From Ascidiella aspersa (Eukaryota), in assembly GCA_963924565.1 (NCBI GenBank), contig OZ004612.1, forward strand, positions 7,068,001 through 7,132,000: 64,000 bases of DNA, in the 5' to 3' direction. Shown piece after piece: positions 3,219-55,300 of this stretch. The translations under genes were made by a program, and so were the position numbers. The notes below the pieces were generated by a model that was not told the DNA's origin, did not search any database, and was given only the letters and a program-made list of their open reading frames with translations. Position 1 is the first letter of the stretch. Every line of letters starts with the position of its first letter.

Positions 3219-4599
3219 GGTAAGACTTAAAAATCTTACACCTTAAAATAGCTTAAAGTTACAAACAGGCTAAAAACAACCTACAAATTATAGAGACTGA
3301 TAATATTTTAGCTTTAATTTTTTGTATTATTTTCGTTTGTAAGCATGAAACACTTTTGAGCGGGAAGCATATCAATACAAAGTGAAACACTTCGGGGAAA
3401 ATAACAACAATCAACGACAAAAAGTAAATATAATAAACATAGAAAAAGTCATCGAACCTATGATAGGATAGTGTAAGTGTCACGGGAATGCTTATACATA
3501 AAAAAGCATTGGCCCAACGTTTAAACGACCACATAGGAATCAACGAGCAGAATAAAAGAACAAAAAAAGAACAAAAATCAAATGAGTAATTACATTAGTT
3601 TTCATACAATATAACGGAATAACAACGAATAGGCAAGAAGAAAGTGAAAAGTGCCAATTTATCGTGCTATACAACTCAAGTTAAAAGACATGCTCCCAAT
3701 GCTATTATTTCAAAATTAGTCTTAGTTAACTCTGATATTTGGGCGTAACGCATATGCTATATAGCCGAACCGAAAACGCCCCTATTTTGCTCCGTGTGAT
3801 TTGAGCATTAAATTATCTGCGGTACATTTTAAAGAGGTACACAAAGAAATAATACAGTAATCGAAATTAACGAGCAATACTGCAATCAATATCCGTTGTA
3901 AAACAAAATGCACTGTAAAGAACAAAAGTGGACAAATGTAAAAATTAGGGCGAGTTACAACTAACACATTTATGAAGAAGCCAAATTAGAATACTATACG
4001 AAAATACTTCTTTTAATAAGAAATGCTTTAACCAGAAATGACCGCAATTCCTGGGTTACCAATGGGTCGCTATACTACAGAGGTAGCCTAATACAAAAAA
4101 TCATCACTTTAAAAAATGTAGACTGGAGTTTATGTACCATATAGCTCTAAATAAGCTTTACCGAGTTTCTTTATGTTACAGATAATGCTAAATGAAGTAT
4201 ATTATTTAACGTGTCTCTTTATTTGTCATATTGATTCACAAAATTATAACAACTATATAAAAAGTGGTATATTGGAAACAAAAGGTAGGATTTAAATCAC
4301 GCAATAGTTCCGGGTGAGCACATAGACACCAAAATGCTCCTTAAAATAACGAACTGAATAGCTGCGCTTTTATCCACCGGTTTGGCAACAGCCGATTTAT
4401 ACCATTGGAAACACGAATTGCCGGATATTGTCTATCGCGATCAACTTCCAACCTCACACCCAATTGTTAATATTTGCATTTAATTGTCTAGGCCTACTTG
4501 CTAAACTTAGAAGTCTTTATATTCTGCTGCCCTCTGTTTAGTGTTTTGCTTACGTTATCCGTCTTTCTTCCATCAGGCAGCCCTTTTATTTGGGCTATT

Positions 4600-5590
4600 T
4601 TTCTTTCGTTAGCATTTCTGTTTTCACTAGCCACCCTGTTTTCTAGGATCATCTTGCGTATGTTAGCCATCTTGATTTCGTGAGTCCTCTTGCTTTGTTG
4701 GAGTTCACTCTTGCTTTTCTGAGATGTGGTGATTTTTTGAGTCACCTTGTTTTCCAGAAGTGTTTTTTCATCGTTCAACACTTTTCTGTCGCCATTCTTC
4801 TTTTTTTCAAAGGCCACCAGGGTTTTCTGGGACATAATTCTGTCGTGGGCCATATCGTTTTGCTTGTCCCTCTTACTTCCATAAGCCGTCTGGCTTTCTT
4901 GGACAATCTTCCTTGTATGGGCCATCTTGCTTTCCTGAGTAATTGTTCCTCCTTCGATTATTCTGTTTTGCCGGGGACCACTATTGTCTTCCTGAGATGC
5001 AGTTCTTTTCCGAGTCATCTTGTTTCCGTGAAACCTCTTTATTTGGTCAGTCATTTTGCTCTTGTGAGCCATCTGAGTTTTCTGGTTGTCGTGAGTCACA
5101 TCTTCTTTCTGGTCATGCTGGTTTTCGTAGGACATCTTGCTTTCTTGTACAATCTTGTTTATGTGAGCCATCTTGCTTTCGTGGCTCATTTTTCTTTCGT
5201 GTGACTCCGTGGTTTCGCAAGCCACTTTTCGTTCGTTTACCATCCTGCTGTCGTGAGCCATTTTCCTTTCGTGCGACATATTACTTTTGTCAGCACTTTG
5301 AATTTCTTGAACTGCCTTGCTCACGTGAGCCTTATTACCTCCGTGAACTTTTTCGCTTCTCTGAAATGTTTTTCTCTTTTCCGCCATCTTGATTTCTTTG
5401 ACTGTCTTGCTTCCGTGAGCCGTCTGTCTTTTGTCAGAAACTTTTCGTACGTGAGCCGTTGTACTTCCGCGAGACATCTCGTTTTGCTGGTCAATCTTAC
5501 TTGCATAAGCCTTTCTGCTTTCGTGAGCCATCTTTCTTATATGATCCATATTGCTTTCCGACGATGCCTTGCTTTCCGTAACCATGTTGT
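4600..5590 (-). repeat. Degenerate 18-bp coding tandem repeat encoding (S/R)KMAH(E/D)-like hexapeptides in the receptor tail (present in all five copies)
   Basis: Recurring + strand unit CATCTTGCTTTCGTGAGC and variants; protein e.g. RKMAHESRKAYA, SHERKMAHDSRMVNERK, SHERKMSHESKMAHINK. Confidence 0.75.
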
Positions 5591-8500: not shown

Positions 8501-10202
8501 TTTTGCTGTCCAGCGAATTTACTATTTTTCGAAAATAACAGCATTTGTAGTCTAATTTAGTATAAACTTCAGTGGTTATGAATTTATACCAGGTAACATG
8601 ACATATAATATAACATCTTTGGGCTGAACTGATAACGGACAAAAGCCTAGTAAAAATGCATAGAAACTAATTATTTTGTAAAAACAGTTTATATTAACAT
8701 AATAAAAGTTTAAATATAGTTTGAAACGGATGCAAGGCCTTTTGGTTACCTGTATCCTCTCTTGCATATGTCTTAGCAGGAGTACCGTTTACATTTAGGC
8801 ATTACGCGGGTATCAGTTTTACCTTAGCTGGATACGGTATGACGACAGCTTCCACGGTAAGCATGACAGCAAAGATGGTGGCGTGGTTCGAAGCGCAGGC
8901 GACTTTTCCCTGCTCCATCCCGACCAGCGTCATTCCAGTAGCCTCAAAATCTCCCGTACTGGTGTTGTAGAACACGCAGCGAAGTTTGACGCTGCGCAGA
9001 AGTAGGCTTCCACTAGTGTTGCCTTTGTAGCTTTGCACCGAGTAGATTGACCTGATTATGTCAGTCATGTTGCTTGTCCGAACTTCGTAACTTAACTTAA
9101 ATGGTAAATGTTACGTCACAACATTGTTTGACAACAGCAACTTTAAAGTAGCACGGAGTTGTACAAAGAATTAATAAAACATATCATGCAGGACTTCGGC
9201 TTACTTAGGAAGCATAAAGAGAAGATCGATATTCAAAGTCAAATATAGTTATTTTAAGTATAGGCCTACTGTAGTTATTTGTGTCCCAGTTGTTGATGGG
9301 TGAAACAAGATAAAAAATAAATATATAATGTACAAAAATAAGGCACGAACATTACAACCTTTTTTAGTGCATAAAAAAATGAATTTTTAATTTCCCAACT
9401 ATTGATCATTATGATTTTTTTAATAGTATATCATTTTCATAAGGAGTAAAGTAAATTATAGTGGAATGGCCAACAGGCAGTGCATTTAAGCGAACGATTT
9501 AATTTAAGTGTACGTAAGTTACTGGTTTTAATTTAATTAACTTAACCTATAAGTCTTTTGGACAAAATCGCTCAACTTTACTAAACCCTTTCGGACAAAT
9601 AAATTCATTTCACTTAAGCGTGTTCTTTAATAATTAATTTTTGATACAATTTATTTAGTCTTACCGCAAAGTCTGTTAGTAATTATGCTTCATAACTACA
9701 TATTACGTTTTGTTATTCGCGAATTCAAACATCTTCCGGATCGGATAAATTTACCAATTATAATAATTTACCATTTTATTTCTACTTTTGTAAATGACAT
9801 GCCCAGCCTCTACTTGCTATAAAAATTACTTAGACTGAGCCTTGACTTCATGTGTTTAGTAAATGATTTGACTTTTAGTTGTTTTTCTGCAAATGATTTA
9901 ACTTTCAATTAAAAATAACTGGTTTGCAACACAGTAAAAATTTACTTAAATAAAAAAAAATCTGCATACCGTAACATTCCCCGTCAATTTTGCGGGTGTA
10001 ACTCCCAGTAGGGTTCCCATCAAAAAGTTGCCTTCAAGAGTTCCGTCTTCCTTCAAAGATTTGTTGGCAACCCATTGGTTGGTCGGTGGGGTAAAATTGA
10101 TCAATTCCAGTGCGACTCGCTTTGGTGTAATAAATGACGTCAGAGCTACGTCATCGAATTGGTAAGTGGTCGAGTTTCCTGGCTCGTGCATCAGGTATTC
10201 TA

Positions 10203-10261
10203 CTTTGGCGTCGTTTTCTGAACAAGGCTTGCCTTTGGTGTCGGTTTCTGAACAAGGCTTG
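10203..10261. repeat. 30-bp tandem duplication at the exon-5 splice acceptor (also in copies 2 and 4)
   Basis: CTTTGGCGTCGTTTTCTGAACAAGGCTTG / CTTTGGTGTCGGTTTCTGAACAAGGCTTG, period 30; single copy in copy 3 (~35309-35337). Confidence 0.85.
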
Positions 10262-10552
10262 TGCTTTAACAAAATGGGTTTAGTTCCTTGTGTTTAGTAA
10301 AAGAAGATAAAATTTCGGCAACGTGGACACAAACCAATATACGTTTGATTTCGTTAAGTCACCGAGAACATCATTTCACATTTTCGGATTTTTTGAGGTT
10401 GGTTCTAAGCACGATTTTTTTAGAATTCAAAATACTGTAGGACGGATAAAAAGACATGCTCATTTTTATTAAATTCGTGCTTTGCTCACTTAAAAAAGTT
10501 GAAAGGAATTGGGTCGCCAAATATTCGCTGTTAGCTACCCTTGGCATTTAGG

Positions 10553-11143
10553 CAGGGAGTCTAACCGGAACCGAAGTGGAACTTTATGAACCGGTTTTGG
10601 GTCAATTTTTTTCGAACCGTAACCGAACCTGTACCGTTTTTTAAACGACTTTAAGTAGCCGAAGCGGAACTGAACCAAATAATTTGAACGAACATGAACT
10701 TTAAACGAACCCGAACCTGAGCGGTTTGCTCCAGCATGACGTCACAACTTGTATTTTAAAGACTCAAATTATGCCATGTTTAAAATTTTATAAACAAATT
10801 TGAATATTGATTAAAAAACGTTGATTTTTTTTATTTTTTAGATATTTAAATAATGAGTTGCTGTTTTCTTAATACGTCACGTAACTTTAACTGAATGACT
10901 TACTATTCATAGATTATTCTCTACATTTGTTGACCTACATTTTTAGATTTAACGCAATTTATATAATATCCGAACCGGAACTTTATCAACCGGTTTTGAA
11001 ATAACGATGGTCGGACCGGAGCTGAACCGTAACTTTTGATTTGCTCCGAACCGAAACCGAAACTGAAACTGAACCATATTCCGAAAAAATCCTTAAACCC
11101 GAACCGAACCTGAACCGGAAAAGGCAAACGGTTCGACTCCCTG
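10553..11143. mobile_element. hAT-type MITE with internal GAACC/AACCG repeats, in intron 4 of copy 1
   Basis: TIRs CAGGGAGTCTAACCG ... CGGTTCGACTCCCTG; 8-bp flanks CATTTAGG / TATTTAGG (7/8 TSD). Confidence 0.85.
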
Positions 11144-14100
11144 TATTTAGGTCGTAGTCCCATCGAAAAGGAATGGTAGCCCATAATAAAATATATTTTA
11201 TGCACAGGCTATGATAAACGAATTTACACTGCTGGGCATTTAGATATTGACTTAGCCGAAACAAATTGATTTGGTGGCTTTAAGGTTAAGACTTTCTTAC
11301 AAATCGTAATTTGAATCGCCCGCAACTTGATTCAGTAATTACTCATTATGCTTCAGGGTAAGTAGACCAGTTTGTGTAAAAACAAACAAATTGATAAACT
11401 TTTTAAAGGTTCACTTTTAGTTTTCGCTTTTTAACCAATACTGATCTAACGCTGAACTTACCGAATTTAGAGCAGATGTCGTTTTGAGAATCATCGCTTT
11501 TAATGCGATAAAATGTTGCTGTAAATAAAAAGGTTGATTTAATATGATTTAAGTTTGCTAGATTTTGTGTAGTTGGATTTTTAAAAAGCAGGACATAGGC
11601 CTGTACACATTAATGATGTAACAATTTGTTGCATTTATATTATGCAATACGCTAACTTATACATTAAATTCATCTTATTGTTCTAAACTTTGATCTAAAT
11701 GCTTTTCAATATACTAGAGCCGTCGTCGCAATAGATATTGAATTATTTATTCTAAACTAAAAAAATAATTCTCGAAAAACACCACCAAAGCTCCCGAAAA
11801 AACGAAATCGCAAATATGGAAAATCAATACCAAACATTAGCATTATATCTTGGTAGAATATCTCTCCAATTTCGCAAAATCATTTATTTTTTTTAACTAG
11901 CGGGGGCGCGCGGCAAACAATGCTTCAGGGTATAAGCGTTGATGAAATTGTTTATAAGCCTGGTGGGTTAAAAATTACACTTACCATTGAAGTAACACAC
12001 ATAAGAGTTTTTTTCGTCCCCGTCTATGTTGTCCCACTTAGTTGAATCTCTCATCATAATCACGCATTTTTGATCTGGATCAGACGAAGGCTGACATGTA
12101 TTCCAACTGTCGTGATATGTAACGCTGCTTCCATCCGTCCAACGATAAGAATTTTTTTGACCTATATTTGTTTCAGAGCGTGCTCCTGCGAAGTTCAAAT
12201 TTATAAGAACAAAATTTAATTTCTAATTATATACTTCGTCAAACCATTATATAACCTGTGTGTAGCAGGACAGCAAGAGCCTAGTATGACGTTGTAGTGG
12301 AAAATACAGTATGGTGGTCGTATTTTGTTTTACAATAAGGTCTTAAAACCAAGTTACCAAAGTCGAAGAGGTTCAAAATTGGTCAGGGTGAACATTATTG
12401 TAGTTTAAATAAAAAAAAAATTTAGTGTCGACAATGTTTGTTTTTTTAATAAGTAAACGTCTACAAAAAGTACAACAGCCTTGAAGTTATTGCAGCTGTC
12501 TTAGGATGAATTGTGGTAAACCAGTCGTTTTATAATGTGGTCATAAGTGGTTCATATTGGGCACGAATGCTTTAATATGTTCTAACTGACTTCCTCATTT
12601 AATATTGAGCAATACCCGAAAAGCTAACACAAACAATGCAGCACAAAAACAAACCACTAGTTTTGTTAGAATTACCGCCTGATTTGTTAAAAAATATATT
12701 CAAAGTAAAACATTTCTAAAAAAACTGTGACTTTTAAATAAGGGTTACTCGGCTACTCGCCCATTGATATCATTACAAAATTGTGTCGCCGACGGCACTA
12801 GTTCTCGTGATTAAATTTATTGGAAGTGGTTTTAAACCTAGGTAAGATTTTCAAAAATTTGATAAAAATTGCGGAAACACTACGAAGAAATGGCTCATAT
12901 TGATGAAATTGTAAATTATTGTTGCTATTTTCTTGGTTGTGATGTCTTGCTTATTACCAATCTACTTAAGAAAGTTGAGTTGACAAAATTTTGCTATTAT
13001 ACTTTAAGTTTGGTGTTTGGGTTGCCGCCTAAAATGTTAATAAACACTGTTTAAGCAAAATAAAGCCGTTTTACACCTCTTCTGTATATTGAAAATTTGT
13101 TCACCTGAGTATAGATATTTATGTGAGATCACAAACTTTCTTACCGATCCACATGTCGACACCAGGATTGTATTTTCTACCAATACAAGAAACGAGTTCG
13201 TTTTCGTGTTCGTCTTCGATTTTAGCCAGTTGGCCTGCTTTGTTAGAGCATATATATTTGGCGTTATTAAATATTTTTCGACTGTTTTGCTTTTTCCCGA
13301 AAATTCCATATATCTTTACGCTAGTGCCATCTAAAATAAATAGAAATATATGTCTATATATATCAAATTCAATTATAAAAAATATCTAAGTCAATTATAC
13401 ATTTTGTCATTCCTACTGAGAATCTATTCTTGGAAAGCACAACCCAAAAACAAATTATGTCCATATTAAGATTCAGTATTATTTTCTTTATTTGAGTACA
13501 AAAGTACAAAATAAAAATTATTGCTGTGCATAACATACCTGTCAGTTCCAGTTTGCTTGCGATATCCAGGTCTTTAAAGCAAGATTTATATGCATTTCGC
13601 TGACCAGGACCATTTAAACCTACAAACATCCATTGCTTTATTCGCAACAAAGTCTGGACTCGTCTCAACAGATTTACGAGTGGTAAAATCATTTACGGGA
13701 GCAAAAGATAAGAACTAATTCTGCTTTTCTTACAATTAGCTCTGAGAAAGCATTCCTCAATTTTATTCAGTGGTTTGTTATAACAAGGCCTTAACAATTC
13801 AAAAACCATCTTTCGCGTGCTCTTTATACTTTGCGTTTTGCGGCCGGGTTTTAGCACAGTAGAAAATATAGTTATACCATCACAATTGCAATAAGACGTT
13901 TTACCGTTTAAAAATTTTTCTTCACACCTTGAATCCATTTTTACCCGTTGTACAACTTACCTCTCATCCGCACTTCATCGTTCACTTCGATGACCATTCT
14001 TTGCCTGAAAGCTGTTAGTTGGTTAGACGCCAGATGAGAAAACAAGCAAAAGACGACAAAAGAAAACTGCCGCAATCCTTTCCGAAAACCAGCCATGTGT

Positions 14101-17100
14101 TGTACTGATAAATACTTAAACCTGAACAAAACACGTCCCAATTAATATTGACTTCGCTTCAACAACCACATTCCAACATGCTACAACGCAAATTGCGATG
14201 AACGCTACTTCCAAATAAAAAATATTAAGCAAACGAACGATAGAGCGTCAAAATATAAATTGTTTCACGGTAACTAAATATTTGGAGCGGTCACAGTCAT
14301 GCGTCCTAATTAGTGATTGCTAATATGTGTAACACGTTTTGTTCTTGTAGAAATAACCTCATTGTGGAAGAAATAGGCTTCAAGTCTAGCATTGTGGACT
14401 TCAATGCAAACTTTATTCTCACACAACCTATTCAATTGGTGTCAAAACCATCATGATAATCCTGCTATTTGCATCTTTGGTGCTTCCTGACCCGTGTTGC
14501 AAAATACAAAAACTATAGAGAAATCTAATGAACTGACAACGAGATGCGGTTGTGCTTAGCCAGAACGGAAATCGTTTCAATCCTGTTCACTGCTAAACAT
14601 AATTGCACAAGTTTGCATTGAAATGCAAATCAATTTGTTTAGACCACTTTACGAACTGGTTAAGTTTGAGAACATCTGGTGTTAAAGATTGCGAAATTAA
14701 CAATTGATCCATTGTATTGCTATGCGGGCAACACTCGTGCTATCAATGCTAACAATATATCATCCAAAACGGCGTCTATTTTGCTGTGACGCGATGTACA
14801 ATAACGTTAACTTCCGAGGAAAATCCTAGAAAAAAAAACGATTGTACCTTCTTCGTATTGTGCAGTATAGTAATAATCCAATCATACTTTGTCAGCTTCT
14901 TTGTGTCCATTAATTTGTTCAAAATTTTATTTTGTGCTGTCGGACAATAGAATTTGTTTCCGACTTAGAAAGCAAATGTACACTTTTGGTCAGTTAGCAC
15001 TGTGGTCAGCAAATAATATATCTCTAAACTAAAACAAACCTCTTTTGTGAAGATATAAACATGTCGATTGTCGAATGGCTTTGGCAACAAGTTCACAATT
15101 GCCAATGCGACAACTTGGTATTTTCAATGTAGAGGATTTCAAATAGCATATAAGCTGCTTGTTCTTTTTTTAGCGCATTAAATTCAAATCAAAAATTTCT
15201 GTTTAATTTGTCATAGGATTTTACATTTACAGAGTCAATTTATAGGTATTAAACTAACTTGGGTAGCCTATGTTATTTTCCTAGATTAAATTTAATCACG
15301 TTGAAACTTATCACGTCTAACTTATTTAAATAGATTTAAATTAACCATGCGTGACAAACCGTTAATGACCAGCAGGGGACGAATAAGGGAAGTAGAGGGG
15401 CATTAGGCATTATAAATACCAAATGCATAGTTTCTATTTTTTTTCAAATTTTTTTGGCCGTTTTAAGTAATTTAATAAGAATAAAGACGCTGTGCATGTT
15501 TTGGCATGTTGCGTCGTGTAACTAATTTGACGTCTTGTTGTTACATAACTTTATAACTTCATTCCTATAAAATTTAGGCCCCAAACAAAAATCCTAGGTC
15601 TGCCACTGAAATCAAGCATAGGTGTGAGACAATATAGGATCGGATTATATACCCGATGCCCCCATGTTACAAAACCTTTTTTTTTTTCTAATAATAAATA
15701 AAATAGAATATAATTCATAGGTTTCCAATTGCTAAACAATTTGCTAGCCTGTCGACTTGGTAAATATGCCGTTTGTAGGTTTCTATTTCATCAATTGTCC
15801 TTTTTTTACCTTAGCAAGGTCATATGGTAATATCGGATCTGTGTTATTTTTACCCCAAATCCATATAAACAAACCTTACACATACATGCTTGGTACTAAT
15901 CGATACCTTGACTTTTACTACTGACATGGTAATGTAGGGACGAACTGTTAGTATTTATTGGTAAGACTTAAAAATCTTACACCTTAAAATAGCTTAAAGT
16001 TACAAACAGGCTAAAAACAACCTACAAATTATAGAGACTGATAATATTTTAGCTTTAATTTTTTGTATTATTTTCGTTTGTAAGCATGAAACACTTTTGA
16101 GCGGGAAGCATATCAATACAAAGTGAAACACTTCGGGGAAAATAACAACAATCAACGACAAAAAGTAAATATAATAAACATAGAAAAAGTCATCGAACCT
16201 ATGACAGGATATAGTGTAAGTGTCACGGGAATGCTTATACATAAAAAAGCATTGGCCCAACGTTTAAACGACCACATAGGATTCAACGAGCAGAATAAAA
16301 GAACAAAAAAAGAACAAAAATCAAATGAGTAATTACATTAGTTTTCACACAATATAACGGAATAAAAAAAAATAGTCAAGAAGAAAGTAAAAAGTGCCAA
16401 TTTATCGTGCTATACAACTCAAGTTAAAAGACATGCTCCCAATGCTATTATTTCAAAATTAGTATACGTTGCTCTGATATTTGGGCGTAACGCATATGCT
16501 ATATAGCCGAACCGAAAACGCCCCTATTTTGCCCCGTGTGATTTGAGCATCAGATGATCTGCGGTACATTTTAAAGAGGTACACGAAGAAATAATACAGT
16601 AATCGAAATTAACGAGCAATACTGCAATCAATATTCGTTGTAAAACAAAATGCACTGTAAAGAACAAAAGTGGACAAATGTAAAAATTAGGGCGAGTTAC
16701 AACTAACACATTTATGAAGAAGCCAAATTAGAATACTATACGAAAATACTTCTTTTAATAAGAAATGCTTTAACCAGAAATGACCGCCATTCCTGGGTTA
16801 CCAATGGGTCGCTATATCCAGAGGTAGCCTAATACAAAAAATCATCACTTTAAAAAATGTAGACTGGAGTTTATGTGCCATACAGCTCTAAATAAGCTTT
16901 ACCGAGTTTCTTTATGTTACAGATAATGCTAAATGAAGTATATTATTTAACGTGTCTCTTTAGTTGTCATATTTATTCATATAATTATAACAACTGTATA
17001 AAAAGTGGTATATTGGAAACAAAAGGTAGGACTTAAACCACGCAATAGTTCCGGGTGAGCACATAGACACCAAAATGCTACTTAAAATAACGAACTGAAT

Positions 17101-23200: not shown

Positions 23201-26200
23201 TAAAAAAGTTGAAAGGAATTGGGTCACCAAATATTCGCTGTTAGCTACCCTTGGCATTTAGGCAGGGAGTCTAACCGGAACCGAAGTGGAACTTTATGAA
23301 CCGGTTTTGGGTCAATTTTTTTCGAACCGTAACCGAACCTGTACCGTTTTTTAAACGACTTTAAGTAGCCGAAGCGGAACTGAACCAAATAATTTGAACG
23401 AACATGAACTTTAAACGAACCCGAACCTGAGCGGTTTGCTCCAGCATGACGTCACAACTTGTATTTTAAAGACTCAAATTATGCCATGTTTAAAATTTTA
23501 TAAACAAATTTGAATATTGATTAAAAAACGTTGATTTTTTTATTTTTAGATATTTAAATAATGAGTTGCTGTTTTCTTAATACGTCACATAACTTTAACT
23601 GAATGACTTACTATTCATAGATTATTCTCTACATTTGTTGACCTACATTTTTAGATTTAACGCAACTTATATTATATCCGAACCGAAACTTTATCAACCG
23701 GTTTTGAAATAACGATGGTCGAACCGGAGCTCAACAGGAACTTTTAAATTGCTCCGAATCGAAACCGAAACTTAACCATATTCCGAAAAAATCCTTGAAC
23801 CCGAACCGAACCTGAACCGGAAAAGGCAAACGGTTCGACTCCCTGTATTTAGGTCGTCGCAAAAATCTAACAAGAAAAAAAGTAATCCCATCGAAAAGGA
23901 ATGGTAGCCCATAATAAAATATATTTTATGCACAGGCTATGATAAACGAATTTACGCTGTTGGGCATTTAGATATTGACTTAGCTGAAACAGATTGGTTT
24001 GGCGACTTCAAGGTTTAGACTTTCTTGCAAATCGTAATTTGAATCGCCCGCAACTTGATTCAGTAATTACTCATTATGCTTCAGGGTAAGTAGATCAGTT
24101 TGTGTAAAAACAAACAAATTGATAAACTTTTTAAAGGTTCACTTTTAGTTTTCGCTTTTTAACCAATACTGATCTAACGCTGAACTTACCGAATTTAGAG
24201 CAGATGTCGTTTTGAGAATCATCGCTTTTCATGCGATAAAATGTTGCTGTAAATAAAAAGGTTGATTTAATATGATTTAAGTTTGCTAGATTTTGTGTAG
24301 TTGGATTTTAAATAAACAGGACATAGGCCTGTACACATAAATGATGTAACAATTTGTTGCATTTATATTATGCAATACGCTAACTTATACTTTAAATTCA
24401 TCTTATTGTTCTAAACTTTGATCTAAATGCTTTTCAATATACTAGAGCCGTCGTCGCAATAGATAATAAAAAAAAAATGTTTTTAACTTATTACACTGGT
24501 GGGTTAAAAATTACACTTACCATTGAAGTAACACACAAAAGGGTTTGCTTTGTCCTCGATGTTGTCCCACTTAGTTGAATTTTTCATCATAATGACATAT
24601 TTTTGATCTTGAAGATCAGACGGCTGACTTGAATGCCAACTGTCGTGATATGTAACGCTGCTTTCATCCGTCCAACGATAAGAAATATTTTGACCTATAT
24701 TTTCTTTAGCGCTCGCGCCTGCGAAGTGCAAATTTATAAGAACAAAATTCAATTTTTAATTAAATACTCCGCCAAACCATTATATAATTTGTAGCAGGAC
24801 AATAAGGACCTGGTATGACGTTGTAATGGCAAATACAGTATGGTGGTGGTATTTTGTTTTACAATAAGGTCTTAAAACCAAGTTACCAAAGTCGAAGAGG
24901 TTCAAAATTGGTCAGGGTGAACATTATTGGAGTTTAAATCAAACAAAAATGAAGAAAAATTTAGTGTCGACAATGTTTTTTTTTTAAATAAGTAAACGCC
25001 TACAAAAAGTACAACAGCCTCGAAGTTATTGCAGCTGTAGGACACGGTCTTGAATATAAATTGTGGTAAACCAGTCGTTTAATAATGTGGTCATAAGTGG
25101 TTCATATTGGGCACGAATGCTTTAATCTATTCTAATTGATTTTCTCATTCAATATTGAGCAATACCCGAAAAGCTAACACAAACAATGCAGCACAAAAAC
25201 AAACCACTATAGTTTTGTTAGAATTACCGCCTGATTTGTTAAAAAATATATTCAAAGTAAAACATTTCTAAAAAAACTGTGACTTTTAGATTGGCTACTC
25301 GTCCATTGAGATCATTACAAAATTGAGTCGCCGACTGCACTAGTTCTCGTGATTAAATTTATTGGAAGTGGTTTTAAACCTATAGGTAAGATTTTCACAA
25401 AATTGATAAAAATTGCGGAAGTAATGCGAATAAATGGCTCATATTAATGAAATTGTAAATCATGGCTGCTATTGTCTTGTTTGTGATGATTTCCTTGATT
25501 ATTAACAATCTACTTAAGAAAGTTGATTTGACAAAATTTCGCTATTATATACTTTAAGTTTGGTGTTTGGGTTGCCGCCTAAAATGTTAATAAACACTGT
25601 TTAAGCAAAATAAAGCCGTTTTAACACCACTTCTGTATATTGAAAATTTGTTCACCTGAGTAGTCATTTATTTGTGACCACAAACTTTCTTACCTATCCA
25701 CATGTCGAAATTGTGTTGTTTACGGATGCAGTCAACGAGTGCGTTTTCGTTTTCGTCTTCGATTTTAGCTAGTTGGCCTGCTTTGTTAGAGCATTCCTTT
25801 CGGGCTTCCGAAAATGTTTTTTGATTTTTTTTCTTTTTCCCGAAAAGTCCATATATCTTTACTCTAGTGCCATCTAGAATGAAAAAAAATATCAAATTCA
25901 AATCCTATACCCTTTGTCGTTCCTATACTGAGAATCGATTCTGCAAAAGCACATCCCAAAAACAAATTATGTCCAATTTAAGATTCAGTATTATTTTCTG
26001 TATTGGAGTACAAAAGTACAAAATAAAAATTATTGGTGTGGATAACATACCTGTTAGTCCCAGTTTGCTTGCGATACCCAGGTCTTTAAAGCAATATTCA
26101 TATACACTTCGACGATCAGTACCATTTAAACCTATAAACATACATTGCTTTATTCGCAAAAAAGTCTGGTCTCGTCCCAACAGGTTTACGAGGGGTAAAA

Positions 26201-35700: not shown

Positions 35701-38700
35701 TGTGACTGTATAATCAGGCAATTCGATTATATCGTTAAAAATATGTACATTGTTAGACTATCTTCGATTATATTTAAAAAAATGCCGTCCAACTGAAAAC
35801 TGAAGACAAAAATATTAAGCAATATTAAACATCAAGACTAACAGGTTGGCGAAAACGTTAATGAAGACCTTACTAAAAAGTTTAAATTTACTGTGTTGCG
35901 CTAAGTGCTGTGCTTCGAATCGTGCATATTGCATTTATTTTATTTCACCGTTTGTCTTTTATAAACGGGTGTTATGGTTGCACCATTCTTTTGTCAGTTT
36001 ACATGTTGTATCTGCGAAATAACCTTACTGAATTTTATATTTGGAGTCAGCACCGACGACTTAAATGCTTACCTTTGTAGAAACATACATAATTTTTCAT
36101 CCCGTCTACTGCGTTATTCCACTTGTTTTTTTGCCATATGTGGACGTACAGTTCGTTTCGACGATCATCAGGTTGACCGCCTGACCAAAACTCCGTTGAT
36201 TTTGATACTTCGCTCCCATCAGTCCAATAATACGAACCTATTTCATCTAGAGGCGTGCTATTTTTGGCCTTTGCTCCTGGAAAAATTTAGTTAAAAATCA
36301 AATAATGTTTTTAAATAGTGTTTTTAATATATTGTTTATTTTCAGCAAAACCTTAATTTGGCGTATAATTAAGTAAACCTGCATAAAAAGCTGACTAATG
36401 GTATTTTTTTTTTATATATATTTTAGACAGGGTTGCGTTGTTTATAATTTGTCAGGGGAATATTTTGAGGAGTTAGTATTCCATGCGTGGTTTCTCAGCG
36501 TTAGTCGGCGTTAAAAATAGGTTTATTAACAAGGTTAAATTTTCGATAATTTATATTTAAATTTGGTTTGTTGGTTTAGGCTATTCCCTGACTAGCTTTG
36601 GCAAGCAAAACACATATTGGCCTTATATTTCCCACTTTTACCTATATTATGACTTATCTAATACTAAGAGGTTATGTTTGCCAAAAGATACTTTTTCAAT
36701 GGCGGTATTTCTGTAATCACTGTGCAATTTATTTTTTTTAATTTAGATTTGCAATTTTTTGAGTTTTATTTTGACCGAATTATAATTAATAGCCGATTCT
36801 TTCCTTAATTTTCAACAAAAATCAAAAATATGCATGCATCGACGGCCCCGTTAATTTCGGCTCTCCCCCATAATACGAAACTTTAGAAAGGCATTTCTAC
36901 TACATATAGTCGGCTTGATTCGTCCGCCACGCGCCGGACGGCTAACATTAATAGAGAAAAGACGTTTTATCCCTTACTAGTATTTGTGCCGTGCTTTGTA
37001 GCCGAGTGTTTATTCGATTCCTAAACAGGGTTGGAAATAGAATAATTTTTTTATCGAATCGATAAAAAATATCTTACAGATACACATCGGATATGTCGAC
37101 ACACAAATTACGTCATAACAGAGCGTCAAAAACAGACGTTCCAAAACTTTACCAAAAATTTTGCGTGAAATACCCGTTGCAATTATTTTATATTTCGCGG
37201 CCCTGCAAAAATTCAAGGGTCAGTTGACCCATGTTTCTTGTAGAACACTAGTGAAGTAACGATTATTTGTAACTAAGGTTGCAACTTTGTAACTAATGGG
37301 TACAATTCGCTAATAGCAGATAGTACAGCATAGATGCTTTATGATGTCACAATAGACATCATAAAACACGATATATCGTTGAATAATAAAGCTTAAATTA
37401 AGACAATAATGGTAACAGACAATTGTTAAAACATAGACTAATGTTCAAAAACATTCGCTATAGCCTAATGTTGAAAAACATAAAGACCAATTCTCCTTGC
37501 AGACCCCTGAAACTGCTGTACTGACCCAGTTTGGGAACAAGAAATAGCTTTATGAAAACTGAGGTTATCGCCGTAATAAACTAATATGCTAAACTAAAAC
37601 CCTAGCTTAAAGGCTTTAAGGAGGTTGTAGGCTGGCCTGGTGAAAAAGGACCAGGCCTGGTAAAAATGGAACACTTTTCTACCAACACGATATATCTAAA
37701 AATGTAGTTTACCGTAAAGCCGTCTCGGGAGTAGTGTAATTGTTTTGCCATTGAAACGAATCACAATTAACATAATGATTTTCGGGTGCTTTTTGGGGAT
37801 TGGGTTGATTCTCACGTTGGGTCAACCTCATTTTTGTCTGTTACTTGGCCATAAATTTGATACATTCTGAAATTCTTTTACGGTTTACATTTTTGTCTTC
37901 AAATGGTGACTGGTTCTAATGCGTTCGATTCCGTAATACCACGATAACCACGCGCCTTTCACTGTATTATGTTTGCTTATACACCGAGTCAACAGTGCCG
38001 TTATCATATGGACAACATCTTTAGAAGGTTTTACAGTGGCCACTTTTCACGCGATATGTCACGGTTTTCGTTACGCGAAAGATGTGTGGCGTGATTAGCT
38101 CGAATCTACAACAAATTTGTTGTTACAACGAAATATACAATAGTGATAAACAGTCAACGGCCTCATGGATTTTTAGATTTGATTTAACCATTGGGAAATC
38201 AGCTAGGATTTGCCAATTTATGAAGGCTATTGCAGAGGTTATTATTTAGTATGCCCGGGAAGCGCTAGTAATCCGGCAAGAGTTGCTTATTAAAACTCCT
38301 AATATGGTCAACGCCGGGTATTTCGTCTTATAGGTTTCTTATATCGACATATGTTGTATAGTTTTTTATCCATAAACAAAAAAATAAATTATTACACTTC
38401 AACAAAATAAACTAAAGAAAGAATTTAATTAAATATCTAAATAACTTAAGTCCAAGTTGAATTACTCATCTAAATGAGAGTCAAGTAATTCTGCCTAAAA
38501 GAGGATGGTCAATTATTTTTAAAAACAGTGACTTTGCTTAAGATTCGCTTCATTACAACACCGCTTTATGTTGACTATTTGTTGACATTTATGTTAAGCC
38601 CAAATCTTCTTACCGATCCATAGTTCATCATTTGGGTTGTACTCAGCCATGCAACTCACAAGTTCATTTTCTTGTTCGTTTTCGATTTTTGCCAATTGCC

Positions 38701-41700
38701 CGTTGTTTTTCATAGCGCATTGATTTTGGGCTTCCTCGAAATCTTTCTTATCTCGAAAAACTATGTAAAGCTTTACGACTGCTCCGTCTAAAAACAAAAA
38801 AACACGTTTAAATTACAGTTACGATCTTGCCTACTCAGACGTTATTATATAAATGTGTATTGGAGTTTTTCGGAATTTATTGTGGACAGATATTTATACT
38901 TTAAACCAGGGGTCGGCAACCTTTTTTGCACTGCGGACCGGTTTAAAACTAAAATTTTGTCGCGGACCGGCCTTAAAAAACAACAAATGTTCAGAAAAGT
39001 AAATTTATTGCAACTTTTAATGCGAAATTTATGCTTGTTTTGCCGCAAAGAGGTGCTCCCATCTAAGAATTATTGAACTTACTGAAACCCGCGGGCGGCA
39101 TCCGGCCAGCCAAACAATTTAGTTTATTCCGCAGACCGCGGCCCATTTCAATAAAACTTTTAGGCCTTCACGTTTTTTCTTAAATTAGACTTGTATATAC
39201 CATTATTGCCAATTCCTATATTCTTATCAGCTTGTCAATATAAGGATATTTAAAGCATTCTTTCAAACGAAGTCACACTTTTGTATATCATGTAATAATG
39301 TATAATCCCATTTTTGACCAGGCCCTTCAAGACACTTTTGATAGTTAGCCTACGTAATATAAAAAAAATAATAATGGAAAAAGTAGGAAACACAGACCGA
39401 CACCTGAAAAGTACAGTATAGACCTACGTATAAGGCTTGCCAGAACGATGTCAGAAAAAAAAGGCTTGTGACTTTTTTGTCATTTTTATAGAGCAGGGGT
39501 CGGCAACCTACGTCCCGCGGGCCGGATCCGGCCCACCTAAGTAATTCATCCGGCCCGTCGCCTCTTTGACAAACTAGACACGAGTCTATACTATTTTAAC
39601 TACGTTAATGCGATAAATTTTCGCGCTTTGCGCGAATGATCTCAAAAACCGGTAAGTTTACATTTTGATACTGTCTTTTAAATAGATCAGCGCTTTACCG
39701 TTGCGGCGTGGAAGGCTGGCAAGTGCGCCGCGGTCAAACGGAAAACGAAATTTTTTGACATATATTTTATTATTTTTGGCAGTGTAATAAATTCTTGCGA
39801 AAAATTTCAAAGAAACACCGGTATAACAAAAAAAAACGCGCTCGTTTCGCTCGCCACGTACGCCCAGACTTAAAAATTTAGCAAATACTGATAGATTAAC
39901 CAATAAAGTTATCGCGTTTTTCAAAGTAGTTTTATTACACTTTTCATTAATAGTATTCATGAACAAGTGTGGACTCGAATCTTACATCAAACAAACTCTT
40001 TTTTTCTCGCTTTGTGCCAACACATTTTTGTCTCCTTAAATGTAATTAAACACATCTTGAAGTGCAAAGCAAATCCGAAAACCACCTGATTAAAAGTTGT
40101 TCTAACATTTTAATCACACATTTCTTAGTTAACTTTTTGTGCGGCCCGCAGAGACCTTTCTGAGTTTGGTTTTGGCCCGCGACTAGAAAAAGGTTGCCGA
40201 CCCCTGTTATAGAGTCTACATTACAACTATAGAGGCTAAAACTAATTAATATACATACGTTTTCTCGAAAACTTTCCTGCTTAAATATCAAAATAATAAA
40301 TTATTTCAATATGGGGCATTAGTTTATGAACATTTTTTGCATGAAATTCTGTTGTACTTTAAGGTGAGCACGCTTAAAATTAAATCACATGATATTTTAG
40401 CCAATTTTTCGTTATATTCTAAGTACTAGAAGTAGATTTTGTAATAAAAATTTGCATTATGGATGTTGTCAACGTTCTATGTACCGCATATGGCCAGGAC
40501 ACACTAGTTGTTTTGTACCTCACGAGAGCTTACTACTAATTTGGATTTTTTATCATACCAAACAACCATGGACTTATAGTCTATATTAGAACGAAGTTAA
40601 ATGTGTTTTAAATACTTTTTTAGGTTTTATGTACTGTTCGTGTTTAAACAAAATTTTAATCTGACAACCCTGCTACGGACCGGTAGCCAACTCCTCGCGG
40701 ACCAATACCGGTCCGCGGACCGGCATTTGCCGACCATTGCTTTAAATGATTGCTATGCATAGATTCTTTGTTAAATGAAATTCCCAAATAAAATATGAAT
40801 ATATCATACCTTGAAGTTGCTCTGGGTTGTTTTCGTAGTTGTTCGTAAAACACAATTCATATCGTGTTAAGGATTCAACTTCGAAGGTTGTACCTTTACA
40901 TAATGTTTTTGTTTGTATGTTTTCAGAAGTTACTTTAAAAGGTGGCCAAGTATGGCGAAAAAATAAGCATGGCCTCATTGCGCATTGTACACGTTTGCCA
41001 TTTTTTCGTGTTCCGAAATACATTTTAATCATAGAATATTAAACACTGTTTTCGAATTTGAGCTTTTATGCAAATTGTATGCAAAATGTGTCTTCTGATG
41101 TTTAATGTTATATGGAGAACATTAAAAACCTTTAGAGATTTAGGTGAAAAGTTACTCTTTTTTTTACACAATAAGAGAAGCTAATGTATAGAATATTTTC
41201 CGCATTTGACGTATTTTAAAATAAAACACTCTCTTTTTTTCTTCAGCTGCATTGAATATATTTTAGTTGTCGTTTTATTCATTTTTTTGTTGGTGTGCTG
41301 CCACAAATGTTACTTCCTGTTAGTATGCTGCCGGTTAAAAAGTTGTGCTTGGTTCCCAATCATATAGGTAAAGGCAGCCAATTTTACAGTTTCGTTTCAA
41401 ATAACAAGGGATAATTTAATTTAAACTGTGTTATTACCCTGGCTATTTAGTAACCAGTAAACCAGTATTAAACTAAAAAGCGTTTCAAACCTATAAACTA
41501 TGACATTCGATTTGAAATGCGTATAGCCACGGTGCAAATCTTTCTAAATTATTAAAAATAACGTCATCCTTCTGAAGACATATTTCTTTCTTGCAAACGG
41601 TTCTAATTGGTTAAACTTGCTGATACCCTTGCCTAATCATTAAGTGTCCGACAAATGCTGTTCGGCGAGCAACTAGTGTGCAATGCCAGGTGCAACGGTT

Positions 41701-52300: not shown

Positions 52301-55300
52301 TCGTGCTTTGCTCACTTAAAAAAGTTGAAAGGAATTGGGTCACCAAATATTCGCTGTTAGCTACCCTTGGCATTTAGGCAGGGAGTCTAACCGGAACCGA
52401 AGTGGAACTTTATGAACCGGTTTTGGGTCAATTTTTTTTGAACCGTAACCGAACCTGTACCGTTTTTTAAACGACGATTTAAGTAGCCGAAGCGGAACTG
52501 AACCAAATAATTTGAACGAACATGAACTTTAAACGAACCCTAACCTGAGCGGTTTGCTCCAGCATGACGTCACAACTTGTATTTTAAAGACTCAAATTAT
52601 GCCATGTTTAAAATTTTATAAACAAATTTGAATATTGATTGAAAAACGTTGATTTTTTTTATTTTTTAGATATTTAAATAATGAGTTGCTGTTTTCTTAA
52701 TACGTCACGTAACTTTAACTGAATGACTTACTATTCATAGATTATTCTCTACATTTGTTGACCTACATTTTTAGATTGAACGCAATTTATATAATATCCG
52801 AACCGGAACTTTATCAACCGGTTTTGAAATAACGATGGTCGGACCGGAGCTGAACCGTAACTTTTGATTTGCTCCGAACCGAAACCGAAACTGAAATTGA
52901 ACCATATTCCGAAAAAATCCTTAAACCCGAACCGAACCTGAACCGGAAAAGGCAAACGGTTCGACTCCCTGTATTTAGGTCGTAGTCCCATCGAAAAGGA
53001 ATGGTAGCCCATAATAAAATATATTTTATGCACAGGCTATGATAAACGAATTTACGCTGCTGGGCATTTAGATATTGACTTAGCCGAAACAAATTGGTTT
53101 GGTGGCTTTAAGGTTAAGACTTTCTTGTAAATCGTAATTTGAATCGCCCGCAACTTGATTCAGTAATTACTCATTATGCTTCAGGGTAAGTAGATCAGTT
53201 TGTGTAAAAACAAACAAATTGATAAACTTTTTAAAGGTTCACTTTTAGTTTTCGCTTTTTAACCAATACTGATCTAACGCTGAACTTACCGAATTTAGAG
53301 CAGATGTCGTTTTGAGAATCATCGCTTTTAATGCGATAAAATGTTGCTGTAAATAAAAAGGTTGATTTAATATGATTTAAGTTTGCTAGATTTTGTGTAG
53401 TTGGATTTTTAATAAACAGGACATAGTCCTGTACACATTAATGATGTAACAATTTGTTGCATTTATATTATGCAATACGCTAACTTATACTTTAAATTCA
53501 TCTTATTGTTCTAAACTTTGATCTAAATGCTTTTCAATATACTAGAGCCGTCGTCGCAATAGATAATAAAAAAAAATGTTTTTAACTTATTACACTGGTG
53601 GGTTAAAAATTACACTTACCATTGAAGAAACACACAAAAGGGTTTGCTTTGTCCTCGATGTTGTCCCACTTAGTTGAATTTTTCATCATAATGACATATT
53701 TTTGATCTTGAAGATCAGACGGCTGACTTGAATGCCAACTGTCGTGATATGTAACGCTGCTTTCATCCGTCCAAAGATAAGAAATATTTTGACCTATATT
53801 TTCTTTAGCGCTCGCGCCTGCGAAGTGCAAATTTATAAGAACAAAATTCAATTTTTAATTAAATACTACGCCAAACCATTATATAATGTGTAGCAGGACA
53901 ATAAGGACCTGGTATGACGTTGTAATGGCAAATACAGTATGGTGGTGGTATTTTGTTTTACAATAAGGTCTTAAAACCAAGTTACCAAAGTCGAAGAGGT
54001 TCAAAATTGGTCGGGGTGAACATTATTGGAGTTTAAATCAAACAAAAATGAAGAAAAATTTAGTGTCGACAATGTTTTTTTTTTAAATAAGTAAACGCCT
54101 ACAAAAAGTACAACAGCCTCGAAGTTATTGCAGCTGTAGGACACGGTCTTGAATATAAATTGTGGTAAACCAGTCGTTTAATAATGTGGTCATAAGTGGT
54201 TCATATTGGGCACGAATGCTTTAATCTATTCTAATTGATTTTCTCATTCAATATTGAGCAATACCCGAAAAGCTAACACAAACAATGCAGCACAAAAACA
54301 AACCACTATAGTTTTGTTAGAATTACCGCCTGATTTGTTAAAAAATATATTCAAAGTAAAACATTTCTAAAAAAACTGTGACTTTTAGATTGGCTACTCG
54401 TCCATTGATATCATTACAAAATTGTGTCGCCGACTGCACTAGTTCTCGTGATTAAATTTATTGGAAGTGGTTTTAAACCTAGGTAAGATTTTCACAAAAT
54501 TGATAAAAATTGCGGAAGTAATGCGAATAAATGGCTCATATTAATGAAATTGTAAATCATGGATGCTATTGTCTTGTTTGTGATGATTTCCTTGATTATT
54601 ACCAATCTACTTAAGAAAGTTGAGTTGACAAAATTTCGCTATTATATACTTGAAGTTTGGTGTTTGGGTTGCCGCCTAAAATGTTAATAAACACTGTTTA
54701 AGCAAAATAAAGCCGTTTTAACACCACTTCTGTATATTGAAAATTTGTTCACCTGAGTAGTCATTTATTTGTGACCACAAATTTTCTTACCTATCCACAT
54801 GTCGAAATTGTGTTGTTTACGGATGCAGTCAACGAGTGCGTTTTCGTTTTCGTCTTCGATTTTAGCTAGTTGGCCTGCTTTGTTAGAGCATTCCTTTCGG
54901 GCTTCCGAAAATTTTTTTTGATTTTTTTTCTTTTTCCCGAAAAGTCCATATATCTTTACTCTAGTGCCATCTAGAATGAAAAAAAATATCAAATTCAAAT
55001 CCTATACCCTTTGTCGTTCCTATACTGAGAATCGATTCTGCAAAAGCACATCCCAAAAACAAATTATGTCCAATTTAAGATTCAGTATTATTTTCTGTAT
55101 TGGAGTACAAAAGTACAAAATAAAAATTATTGGTGTGGATAACATACCTGTTAGTCCCAGTTTGCTTGCGATACCCAGGTCTTTAAAGCAATATTCATAT
55201 ACACTTCGACGATCAGTACCATTTAAACCTATAAACATACATTGCTTTATTCGCAAAAAAGTCTGGTCTCGTCCCAACAGGTTTACGAGGGGTAAAATCA

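What the first reader, a model, noticed from the sequence alone, without database searches (positions are those of the whole stretch)
11985..13330. Lectin exons of copy 1 vs copy 2 diverge faster than the rest of the gene: diversifying selection
Exon 2 differs at about 20 of ~62 residues plus a 2-aa indel (e.g. KQNSRKIFNNAKYIC vs KKKNQKTFSEARKEC; GRKYNPGVD vs RKQHNFD), yet exon 5 is identical in protein between the two copies and adjacent intron stretches (~13020-13110 vs ~25570-25660) are nearly identical. Changes spare the core GQLAKIEDE and DMWIG motifs.
Basis: partly seen in the sequence, partly recalled or inferred. Interest (0 to 1): 0.75.

Follow-up and report, generated by a model that had tools for sequence, protein, structure and literature searches.

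The report
Lectin-exon divergence island in receptor array
In a row of near-identical lectin-tipped adhesion-GPCR genes, the two exons that encode the lectin tip stay far more different between neighbouring copies than the DNA around them, a known signature of selection keeping gene copies apart while gene conversion makes the rest alike.

Summary
Copy 1 (type A) and copy 2 (type B) differ at 20 of 59 aligned residues plus a 2-residue gap in lectin exon 2, and at 21 of 65 plus a 1-residue gap in exon 3. The next exon is identical in protein, 0 of 86.

The exons differ at 63 of 378 bases against 158 of 2535 in the introns.

Pairwise dN/dS is 0.99 (dN 0.188, dS 0.190). Synonymous sites are raised as much as nonsynonymous ones. 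My own site-model tests give p=0.047 with 5 sequences and p=0.65 with 7.

Intron 2 is a mosaic. Body exons do not follow head type. Divergence decays with distance upstream of exon 2.

Best reading: a divergence island at the lectin head, in an array otherwise homogenised by gene conversion. Reading frames are kept, so these are not pseudogenes. There is no RNA support.

The scan has noted similar lectin-headed arrays elsewhere in this genome.

The parts
13145..13330 (-). Copy 1 (type A) lectin exon 2, 186 nt, phase 1-1. It encodes the N-terminal half of the C-type lectin-like domain.
   Evidence: Translation; Pfam Lectin_C 22.8 bits; splice sites.
11985..12185 (-). Copy 1 (type A) lectin exon 3, 201 nt, phase 1-1. 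It encodes the C-terminal half of the domain, with QPS and WDN motifs.
   Evidence: Translation; Pfam Lectin_C 26.5 bits; splice sites; exon-wise matches to solved lectin domains.
12186..13144 (-). Intron 2 of copy 1. It differs from copy 2 at 64 of 943 aligned bases, with the differences unevenly spread.
   Evidence: Variance/mean ratio 1.91 (P=0.005) and a 136-nt identical run (P=0.002).
13537..13692 (-). Putative exon 1: an ATG-started open frame of 51 codons that ends in a phase-1 donor matching exon 2.
   Evidence: The frame is open in all 7 A/B copies. 15 of 51 residues differ between A and B. Nd 14.5 of 117.7 sites, Sd 3.5 of 35.3 sites. Inferred; no RNA support.
13331..13536 (-). Putative short intron 1, highly diverged between types A and B.
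   Evidence: 21 of 174 aligned bases differ, plus 35 gap columns.
11738..13970 (.). The type A head block, which is the divergence island. Outside it, copies 1 and 2 are mostly 96-100% identical.
   Evidence: Sliding identity; 60-column profile; decay of divergence upstream of exon 2.
11738..11951 (.). An insertion of about 214 bp in intron 3, present in all four type A copies and absent from type B.
   Evidence: Self-BLAST break at 11737/11952 against 24465/24488; gap columns.
25694..25873 (-). Copy 2 (type B) lectin exon 2, 180 nt.
24521..24718 (-). Copy 2 (type B) lectin exon 3, 198 nt. It lacks the two cysteines that type A has near the QPS motif.
54791..54970 (-). Copy 4 (type B) lectin exon 2.
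   Evidence: 1 of 180 nt differs from copy 2.
53620..53817 (-). Copy 4 (type B) lectin exon 3.
   Evidence: 2 of 198 nt differ from copy 2.
38614..38787 (-). Copy 3 (type C) lectin exon 2, 174 nt.
36073..36276 (-). Copy 3 (type C) lectin exon 3, 204 nt, with QPD and WNN motifs.
9971..10232 (-). The exon after the lectin exons in copy 1. Its protein is identical to that of copy 2.
   Evidence: Acceptor and donor read; 0 of 86 residues differ, dS 0.051.
8823..9095 (-). GPS-motif exon of copy 1. It serves as an internal control tract where the exon is less diverged than its intron.
   Evidence: Pfam GPS 29 bits; dN 0.042, dS 0.150; the downstream intron is visibly more diverged in the alignment.

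Best explanation
The window holds part of a ten-gene, minus-strand tandem array. Each gene has a lectin head, a GPS motif and a 7TM body, so it looks like an adhesion GPCR. Most of each 12.5-kb unit is kept nearly identical among copies by gene conversion or unequal crossing over. The lectin head comes in discrete types: A, A', B, C and C'.

Between types A and B, the head block (about 11738-13970) is an island of retained divergence. The coding exons are its summit. Exons 1-3 and the short intron 1 keep an older divergence of roughly 0.13-0.19 per site, at synonymous and nonsynonymous sites alike. The long intron 2 and the upstream flank have been partly re-homogenised, to about 0.07 with identical runs.

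Within the exons, about 30-40% of codons are strongly conserved; by my placement these are the fold core. The rest change at or slightly above the neutral rate.

Shown here: the array, the types, the exon-above-intron contrast, the mosaic, and the preserved reading frames.

Inferred: conversion tracts that would overwrite the head exons are removed by selection because types A and B bind different ligands.
For: 1. Array and types. There are 10 complete genes on C6:7001600-7135640, in the order C', A, A, B, C, A, B, C, B, A'.

2. Homogenised body. Copy 1 against copy 2 is mostly 0.96-1.00 identical in 200-nt windows outside the head block, apart from a few other lower tracts: 8252-8850, 11029-11200 and 4975-5163.

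3. Body segments do not follow head type. The exon after the lectin exons of copy 1 is 100% identical to those of two type B genes, but 95.7% to that of a type A gene with the same exon 2. The GPS exon is 100% to one type A gene and 91% to another. Polymorphisms are shared across types upstream (13 'other_shared' sites).

4. Exons exceed introns. 63 of 378 bases differ in the exons against 158 of 2535 in the introns (p=1.3e-10). 0 of 2155 intron windows reach exon level. After composition and CpG correction, 26.5-34.2 differences are expected against 63 observed.

5. Synonymous sites are raised too. dS is 0.190 and dN 0.188. 5 of 26 fourfold sites differ against an intron rate of 0.062 (p=0.02). 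This fits an older, unconverted exon tract better than pure adaptive acceleration.

6. Intron 2 is a mosaic. The variance/mean ratio is 1.91 (P=0.005), and there is a 136-nt identical run (P=0.002).

7. Divergence decays upstream of exon 2: 17.5% at 1-100 nt, 9-10.5% at 101-400, 7.3%, 3.6%, then 2.1-2.7% beyond 900 nt.

8. Internal control. Around the GPS exon the usual order holds: exon dN 0.042 and dS 0.15, with a more diverged intron.

9. The genes are not pseudogenes. Both exon indels are in frame (6 and 3 nt), against 1 of 16 intron indels. Only 9.1% of neutral simulations stay free of stop codons. Splice sites are kept in all 10 copies.

10. The pattern is a described one. It is the 'peak of divergence' under gene conversion, with opsin exon 5 as the example (PMC3924837, passages read). 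CEACAM32 shows conversion in introns and the leader exon but not in the Ig exons (PMC7042247, abstract read).
Against: - No orthologous array from another species or haplotype could be examined, so the conversion of introns is inferred from the mosaic pattern only.
- The synonymous excess rests on few sites: 11.2 synonymous differences on 67 sites.
- The first 130 columns of intron 2, next to exon 2, are nearly identical (6 of 127). That is a sharp edge rather than a smooth decay.
- The other paralog contrasts do not repeat the exon-specific excess. For B against B3, exons show 3 of 378 against introns 42 of 2779. For C against C', exon 2 shows 10 of 174, but with 6 nonsynonymous to 3 synonymous changes, an equally diverged upstream flank, and exon 3 at 1 of 204.
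- The codon data alone fit a neutral-plus-constrained model (M1a), so no selection on the variable sites is demonstrated.
- No expression was seen. RNA run X3 gave no reads on the lectin exons at 95% likeness or better, with only about 6% of the run read.
- The GC3 difference between head exons (0.37-0.39) and body exons (0.49-0.61) is not matched in body introns (0.29-0.35), so it is weak evidence for biased conversion.
Confidence: 0.55

Rival explanations
1. This is the first reader's view: classical positive (diversifying) selection. After a recent A/B duplication, dated by the introns at about 0.07, amino-acid replacements in the lectin exons were driven to fixation faster than neutral, without any intron homogenisation.
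For: - dN of 0.188 is 2.3-2.9 times the intron divergence.
- M1a against M2a on the 5 A/B sequences gives 2dlnL=6.1, p=0.047, with 4% of sites at omega about 18.
- A against A' has 8 nonsynonymous and 0 synonymous differences. Six of the seven exon-2 changes lie within 35 nt, and by my reading of the aligned columns five of the six changed residues sit at sites that also differ between A and B. No donor exists in the assembly; the best other match is 96%.
- Many replacements change charge.
Against: - dS is raised as much as dN. Omega is 0.99-1.09 and not different from 1 (p=0.81).
- The 7-sequence test gives p=0.65.
- Intron 2 is a significant mosaic.
- Recombination among paralogs and multi-nucleotide codon changes (for example two 3-nt codon changes) are known to inflate site-model tests. 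That point is from my own knowledge, not from a call.
- The codon models are my own implementation and were not checked against PAML.
Confidence: 0.2
2. Relaxed constraint. The surface of the lectin head is simply free to drift in redundant copies. The exon-intron contrast then comes from conversion tracts that missed the short exons by chance, together with a higher mutability of the more GC-rich exons.
For: - M1a fits with 62-70% of codons at omega=1.
- On recent branches, exons are about as diverged as introns: pooled 22 of 1143 against 172 of 11054, summed.
- No expression was detected.
- Exon GC is 0.39 against 0.32 for introns.
Against: - Composition explains only part of the excess: 34.2 differences expected against 63 observed, P=6e-6.
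- Both exons exceed every one of 2155 intron windows.
- Frames, splice sites and core motifs are preserved.
- The loss of two cysteines in type B is paired. I read the coupled change as a sign of a working protein.
Confidence: 0.15
3. Exon replacement. One type received its lectin exons by ectopic conversion from a more distant lectin gene, which would make the exons look older than their introns.
For: The sharp drop of divergence right after exon 2 (6 of 127 bases) would fit an exon-sized tract.
Against: - Whole-genome searches find exon 2 relatives only in this array (10 matches).
- Nothing outside the array is above 45% identical to exon 3.
- No protein above 43% identity appears among 104 hits in the 1.84-billion-protein library.
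- Differences are spread over both exons and putative exon 1, not confined to one patch.
Confidence: 0.05

Closest known systems
Peak of divergence between duplicated genes under gene conversion (Teshima and Innan model; primate red/green opsin exon 5 against its flanking introns)
   Same: The paralogs are tandem and mostly homogenised. The introns are more alike than a functionally important exon. Divergence is highest at the coding target (PMC3924837, passages read; here).
   Different: In the opsins two known tuning residues explain the peak, and orthologues prove the intron conversion. Here about a third of all residues in two or three exons differ, the ligand is unknown, and no orthologue was available.
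CEACAM32 escaping concerted evolution in the ruminant CEA family
   Same: Conversion is found in introns and the leader exon, but not in the exons for the ligand-binding domains. This is read as selection hindering conversion (PMC7042247, abstract read).
   Different: The fold differs (Ig-like domain) and the case concerns a single escaped gene. Here three head types recur in an ordered array, and putative exon 1 is diverged as well.
Clustered protocadherins: regional gene conversion of 3' parts, with diverse N-terminal ectodomains
   Same: A tandem receptor array has a homogenised constant part and a variable ligand-binding part that escapes conversion. Positive diversifying selection is reported there for EC2-EC3 (PMC1852091, passages read).
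   Different: Protocadherin variable exons are spliced to shared constant exons. Here each unit is a complete gene, and omega above 1 is not established.
Adhesion GPCRs with C-type lectin N-termini (reported for amphioxus)
   Same: The domain combination of Lectin C-type, GPS and 7tm_2 (PMC2246102, passages read; here).
   Different: No relation of descent was tested. The Ciona GPCR survey that I read in passages describes mostly GPS-only adhesion receptors (PMC2396169). A paper search for 'adhesion GPCR' + 'C-type lectin' + 'Ciona' found 0 papers.

Membership tests
C-type lectin-like domain (Pfam PF00059) | Profile match above the curated cutoff | tested here: met
   Searched exon by exon: 22.8 and 26.5 bits against a cutoff of 22.6, covering profile positions 2-45 and 49-107 of 107.
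C-type lectin-like domain (Pfam PF00059) | WIG(L) and W-x-D-G core motifs | tested here: met
   DMWIG and YRWTDGS are present in the translations and conserved in A, B and C. The motif names are recalled.
C-type lectin-like domain (Pfam PF00059) | Four canonical cysteines (two disulfides) | tested here: not met
   The helix-1 and last-strand cysteines are present in all types. The strand-3 cysteine is present only in type A. The cysteine after the WND-position motif is absent in all types. Type A has an extra cysteine just before QPS. The canonical positions are recalled.
Calcium-dependent sugar-binding C-type lectins | EPN or QPD motif together with WND | tested here: not met
   Types A and B have QPS and WDN. 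Type C has QPD and WNN. Actual binding was not tested.
Adhesion GPCR | GPS motif and a secretin-type 7TM region | tested here: met
   GPS 29 bits (cutoff 22.5). 7tm_2 scores 30.4 and 35.3 bits on two ORFs (cutoff 20.6).
Adhesion GPCR | Complete GAIN domain with a cleavable site | not tested
   Only the GPS exon and the exon before it were read. No fold was made, because the exon-joined protein was left out.
Divergence island under concerted evolution | The rest of the paralogous unit is homogenised, with incongruent genealogies | tested here: met
Divergence island under concerted evolution | The peak is centred on the coding target, and flanking non-coding DNA is less diverged | tested here: met
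   The edge after exon 2 is sharp rather than graded.
Divergence island under concerted evolution | Exons group by type across species while introns group by species | not testable with these tools
   No relative was found: one search had no candidates, and the best of 104 hits was 43% identical.
Positively selected recognition domain | dN/dS above 1 | tested here: not met
   0.99. M0 omega is 1.09, not different from 1 (p=0.81). It is 0.63 when type C is included.
Positively selected recognition domain | A site model with an omega>1 class fits better | tested here: inconclusive
   p=0.047 with 5 sequences and p=0.65 with 7 sequences. This is my own implementation, and recombination is not modelled.

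The most novel reading that the evidence does not exclude
The lectin heads may be under real adaptive diversification. In that reading the array is a germline repertoire of ligand specificities (A, A', B, C, C') mounted on one homogenised adhesion-GPCR signalling body. It would be an invertebrate-chordate counterpart of variable-head receptor clusters such as clustered protocadherins or NK-receptor lectin arrays, used for glycan, microbe or self/non-self sensing. New head variants such as the A' patch would arise by point mutation at the same exposed helix positions.
Probability: 0.25. Interest if true: 0.65.

Novelty: new member of a known kind. Interest (0 to 1): 0.4.

Why it matters
The locus is a clean, well-bounded example of concerted evolution working against selection for different copies. 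It sits in a receptor family whose ligands are unknown. The divergence island marks the lectin head, and within it the residues around the first helix and the loops flanking the QPS and WDN motifs, as the parts that set the copies apart. That gives a concrete target for binding assays.

It also shows that dN/dS alone would mislead here. The informative contrast is exon against intron, combined with the mosaic of the intron.

It does not change what is known about how such arrays evolve.

Tried and rejected
- **RNA evidence.** One RNA run of the same species label (X3) was laid on 8700-14650 at 80% likeness. 898 reads were laid and none was 99% alike. Depth fell only on a dispersed repeat at 10491-11286, with traces at 12680-13475. 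This gave no splice junctions and no expression evidence. The roughly 18 reads at 13284-13298 carry six listed changes. By my comparison with the type B exon, only one of these matches type B, so I set them aside.
- **Relatives in public proteins.** The search for homologous proteins with exon 3 found no candidate; it only sees proteins of 36-115 residues. The search of protein representatives with exon 3 gave 104 hits, the best 43% identical, mostly multi-lectin proteins. No orthologue test was therefore possible.
- **Donor search.** The A' exon-2 patch has no donor in the genome. Exons 2 and 3 have no close copies outside the array.
- **Seven-sequence site models** gave no support for omega above 1. 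The long type C branch (1.9 substitutions per codon) is probably saturated.
- **GC3 as a sign of biased conversion** was inconclusive.
- **Pseudogene reading** was rejected.
- **Assembly artefact** was rejected. Four type A copies and three type B copies each agree with one another.
- **A 13-nt micro-exon upstream of exon 2** was considered and dropped, because it puts a stop codon in frame in type A (reasoned).
- **No three-dimensional model was made.** Placing the variable residues on helices and loops rests on exon-wise alignments to solved chains and on recalled lectin-domain topology.
- **Paper search** for 'adhesion GPCR' + 'C-type lectin' + 'Ciona' found 0 papers. No supplements were opened.
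- **The organism** was not identified by any search. 'Sea squirt' comes only from earlier notes of this scan.
Full report
**What is there**

The window is G000:C6:7068001-7132000, from a 308.6-Mb assembly. A self-comparison shows five tandem units of about 12.5 kb, with one unit of 16.7 kb.

Each unit is a minus-strand gene made of these parts:
- a C-type lectin-like domain split over two phase 1-1 exons (Pfam Lectin_C, 22.8 and 26.5 bits, searched exon by exon);
- a GPS motif (29 bits);
- two 7tm_2 matches (30.4 and 35.3 bits);
- a long last open frame.

Searching the whole genome and then 164 kb around the window shows ten complete genes on C6:7001600-7135640. By lectin type their order is C', A, A, B, C, A, B, C, B, A'. 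The A-B-C triple is duplicated with a period of 42,113 bp. The two type C head regions are identical over 5,915 aligned bases. The finding's copy 1 is type A and copy 2 is type B. Copy 4 is also type B.

**The observation**

The finding's coordinates run exactly from the end of exon 3 (12185..11985) to the start of exon 2 (13330..13145). Splice sites of both exons are conserved in all ten copies.

| Region, A against B | Residues differing | Bases differing |
|---|---|---|
| Exon 2 | 20 of 59, plus a 2-residue gap | 32 of 180 |
| Exon 3 | 21 of 65, plus a 1-residue gap | 31 of 198 |

In the rest of the gene:
- the exon after the lectin exons is identical in protein (0 of 86 residues, dS 0.051);
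- the TM frames have dN 0.014-0.016;
- the GPS exon has 7 of 90 residues different (dN 0.042, dS 0.150);
- the tail has dN 0.036.

The lectin exons are therefore by far the most diverged coding parts.

**More than chance**

Against the aligned introns, 158 of 2535 bases differ in all: intron 1 part 82 of 1445, intron 2 64 of 943, intron 3 part 12 of 147. The exons have 63 of 378. Fisher's test gives p=1.3e-10. Against only the introns inside the diverged tract (128 of 1597) it gives p=1.6e-6. None of 2155 intron windows of 190 columns reaches either exon's divergence.

I also corrected for base composition and CpG content, using the introns' own class rates. That predicts 26.5-34.2 exon differences against 63 observed.

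**Is it positive selection?**

- Nei-Gojobori counts over both exons give 11.2 synonymous differences on 67.2 sites and 49.8 nonsynonymous differences on 298.8 sites. That is dS 0.190, dN 0.188, ratio 0.99.
- Fourfold sites differ at 5 of 26, against an intron rate of 0.062 (p=0.02). Synonymous sites are therefore raised about as much as replacement sites.
- My own maximum-likelihood codon models (F3x4, not checked against PAML, recombination ignored) give the following for the five distinct A/B sequences: omega 1.09, not different from 1 (p=0.81); M1a against M2a 2dlnL=6.1, p=0.047, with 4% of sites at omega about 18.
- With the two type C sequences added: omega 0.63; M1a fits 38% of codons at omega 0.07 and 62% at omega 1; M2a is no better (p=0.65).

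But omega above 1 is not shown either.

**Evidence for concerted evolution with an island**

- Outside about 11738-13970, copies 1 and 2 are mostly 96-100% identical in 200-nt windows. A few other lower tracts exist, such as 8252-8850.
- Body segments do not follow head type. Copy 1's post-lectin exon is 100% identical to those of two type B genes, but 95.7% to that of a type A gene with an identical exon 2. Its GPS exon is 100% to one type A gene and 91% to another.
- Upstream of the island, 13 sites show polymorphisms shared across types.
- Intron 2 is a mosaic, with variance/mean ratio 1.91 (P=0.005) and a 136-nt identical run (P=0.002).
- Upstream of exon 2, divergence falls with distance: 17.5%, 9-10.5%, 7.3%, 3.6%, then 2.1-2.7%.
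- That flank probably contains exon 1. It is an ATG-started frame of 51 codons, open in all seven A/B copies, ending in a phase-1 donor that fits exon 2. It has 15 of 51 residues different and pN 0.123 against pS 0.099.
- The short intron 1 differs at 21 of 174 bases, plus 35 gap columns.
- The short intron and the exon synonymous sites thus agree on an older divergence of roughly 0.13-0.19. The long intron and the flanks sit near 0.07 or below.
- Around the GPS exon the usual order holds, with the exon less diverged than its intron.

**Functional state**

- Both exon indels are in frame (6 and 3 nt), against 1 of 16 intron indels.
- Only 9.1% of neutral simulations with 61 intron-spectrum substitutions stay free of stop codons.
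- Type B lacks both of the cysteines that type A has around the QPS motif, a paired change.
- No RNA support was obtained. In run X3, with about 6% of the run read, only a dispersed repeat in the intron was covered.

**Where the changes lie**

By exon-wise alignment to solved lectin domains (mannose receptor, rhodocetin, CD23, surfactant proteins) and by recalled domain topology, the conserved blocks are the core strands and the end of helix 1 through the start of helix 2.

The variable residues lie in four places:
- before and on helix 1;
- at the end of helix 2;
- after the WIG motif;
- around the QPS and WDN motifs, which are themselves kept.

**Other contrasts, including those against an exon-specific effect**

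| Contrast | Exons | Introns | Nonsynonymous : synonymous |
|---|---|---|---|
| A against A' | 8 of 387 | 30 of 2794 | 8 : 0 |
| B against B3 | 3 of 378 | 42 of 2779 | 3 : 0 |
| C against C' | exon 2: 10 of 174; exon 3: 1 of 204 | intron 2: 34 of 2336; upstream flank: 55 of 1951 | 7 : 3 |

- For A against A', six of the seven exon-2 changes lie within 35 nt. By my reading of the aligned columns, five of the six changed residues sit at sites that also differ between A and B. No donor exists in the genome.
- For C against C', the upstream flank is locally as diverged as exon 2.

**Verdict**

The best-supported mechanism is a divergence island: selection against homogenising the lectin heads, in an array under concerted evolution.

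This is a known kind of pattern. Examples are the opsins (PMC3924837, passages), CEACAM32 (PMC7042247, abstract) and the protocadherins (PMC1852091, passages). The domain combination is described for amphioxus (PMC2246102, passages).

Strict diversifying selection remains possible but unproven. Earlier notes of this scan describe similar lectin-headed arrays elsewhere in this genome and call the organism a sea squirt. I did not verify the organism.

Noticed in passing
C6:7039033-7106788 (window -28967 to 38788): The A-B-C gene triple is duplicated as a block with a 42,113-bp period. The two type C head regions are identical at 5,915 of 5,915 aligned bases, so the block duplication is very recent.
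   Followed up: partly
L004 / L019:3454-3639 (just right of the window, equivalent to window 67454-67639): The tenth gene (A') differs from type A by 7 bases in exon 2. All 7 are nonsynonymous, and six lie within 35 nt on the stretch before the first cysteine. No donor sequence exists in the assembly.
   Followed up: partly
window 10491-11286: An intronic dispersed repeat is covered by RNA reads in both orientations, at depth 20-100. Nearly all of those reads are under 95% alike, so they come from other copies of a transcribed repeat family.
   Followed up: no
window 11738-11951: An insertion of about 214 bp in intron 3 is present in all four type A copies and absent from type B. It marks the 3' edge of the head block.
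   Followed up: partly
window 12080-12100 and 24615-24635: Type A has two cysteines around the QPS motif where types B and C have none. The paired presence or absence suggests a type-specific extra disulfide.
   Followed up: no
window 8250-9060: This is a second unconverted tract with its own genealogy. A variable patch in the GPS exon and a strongly diverged downstream intron set copy 1 apart from copies 2 and 4, which are 96-99% alike there.
   Followed up: partly
window 10232-10290: Types A and B carry a tandem duplication of about 25 nt at the acceptor of the exon after the lectin exons. DNA homology to type C starts exactly at this exon.
   Followed up: no
window 4497-13692: GC3 is 0.37-0.39 in the head exons and 0.49-0.61 in the body exons. 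Body introns are not GC-enriched (0.29-0.35).
   Followed up: partly
L011:574-846 (C6:6988574-6988846): A more distant relative of the post-lectin exon (41% identity) lies left of the array. This points to a further family member.
   Followed up: no
C2:6.0-7.5 Mb of the same genome: Many weak matches to lectin exon 3 (27-39% identity) cluster on another contig, so the genome holds a large separate lectin-exon cluster.
   Followed up: no
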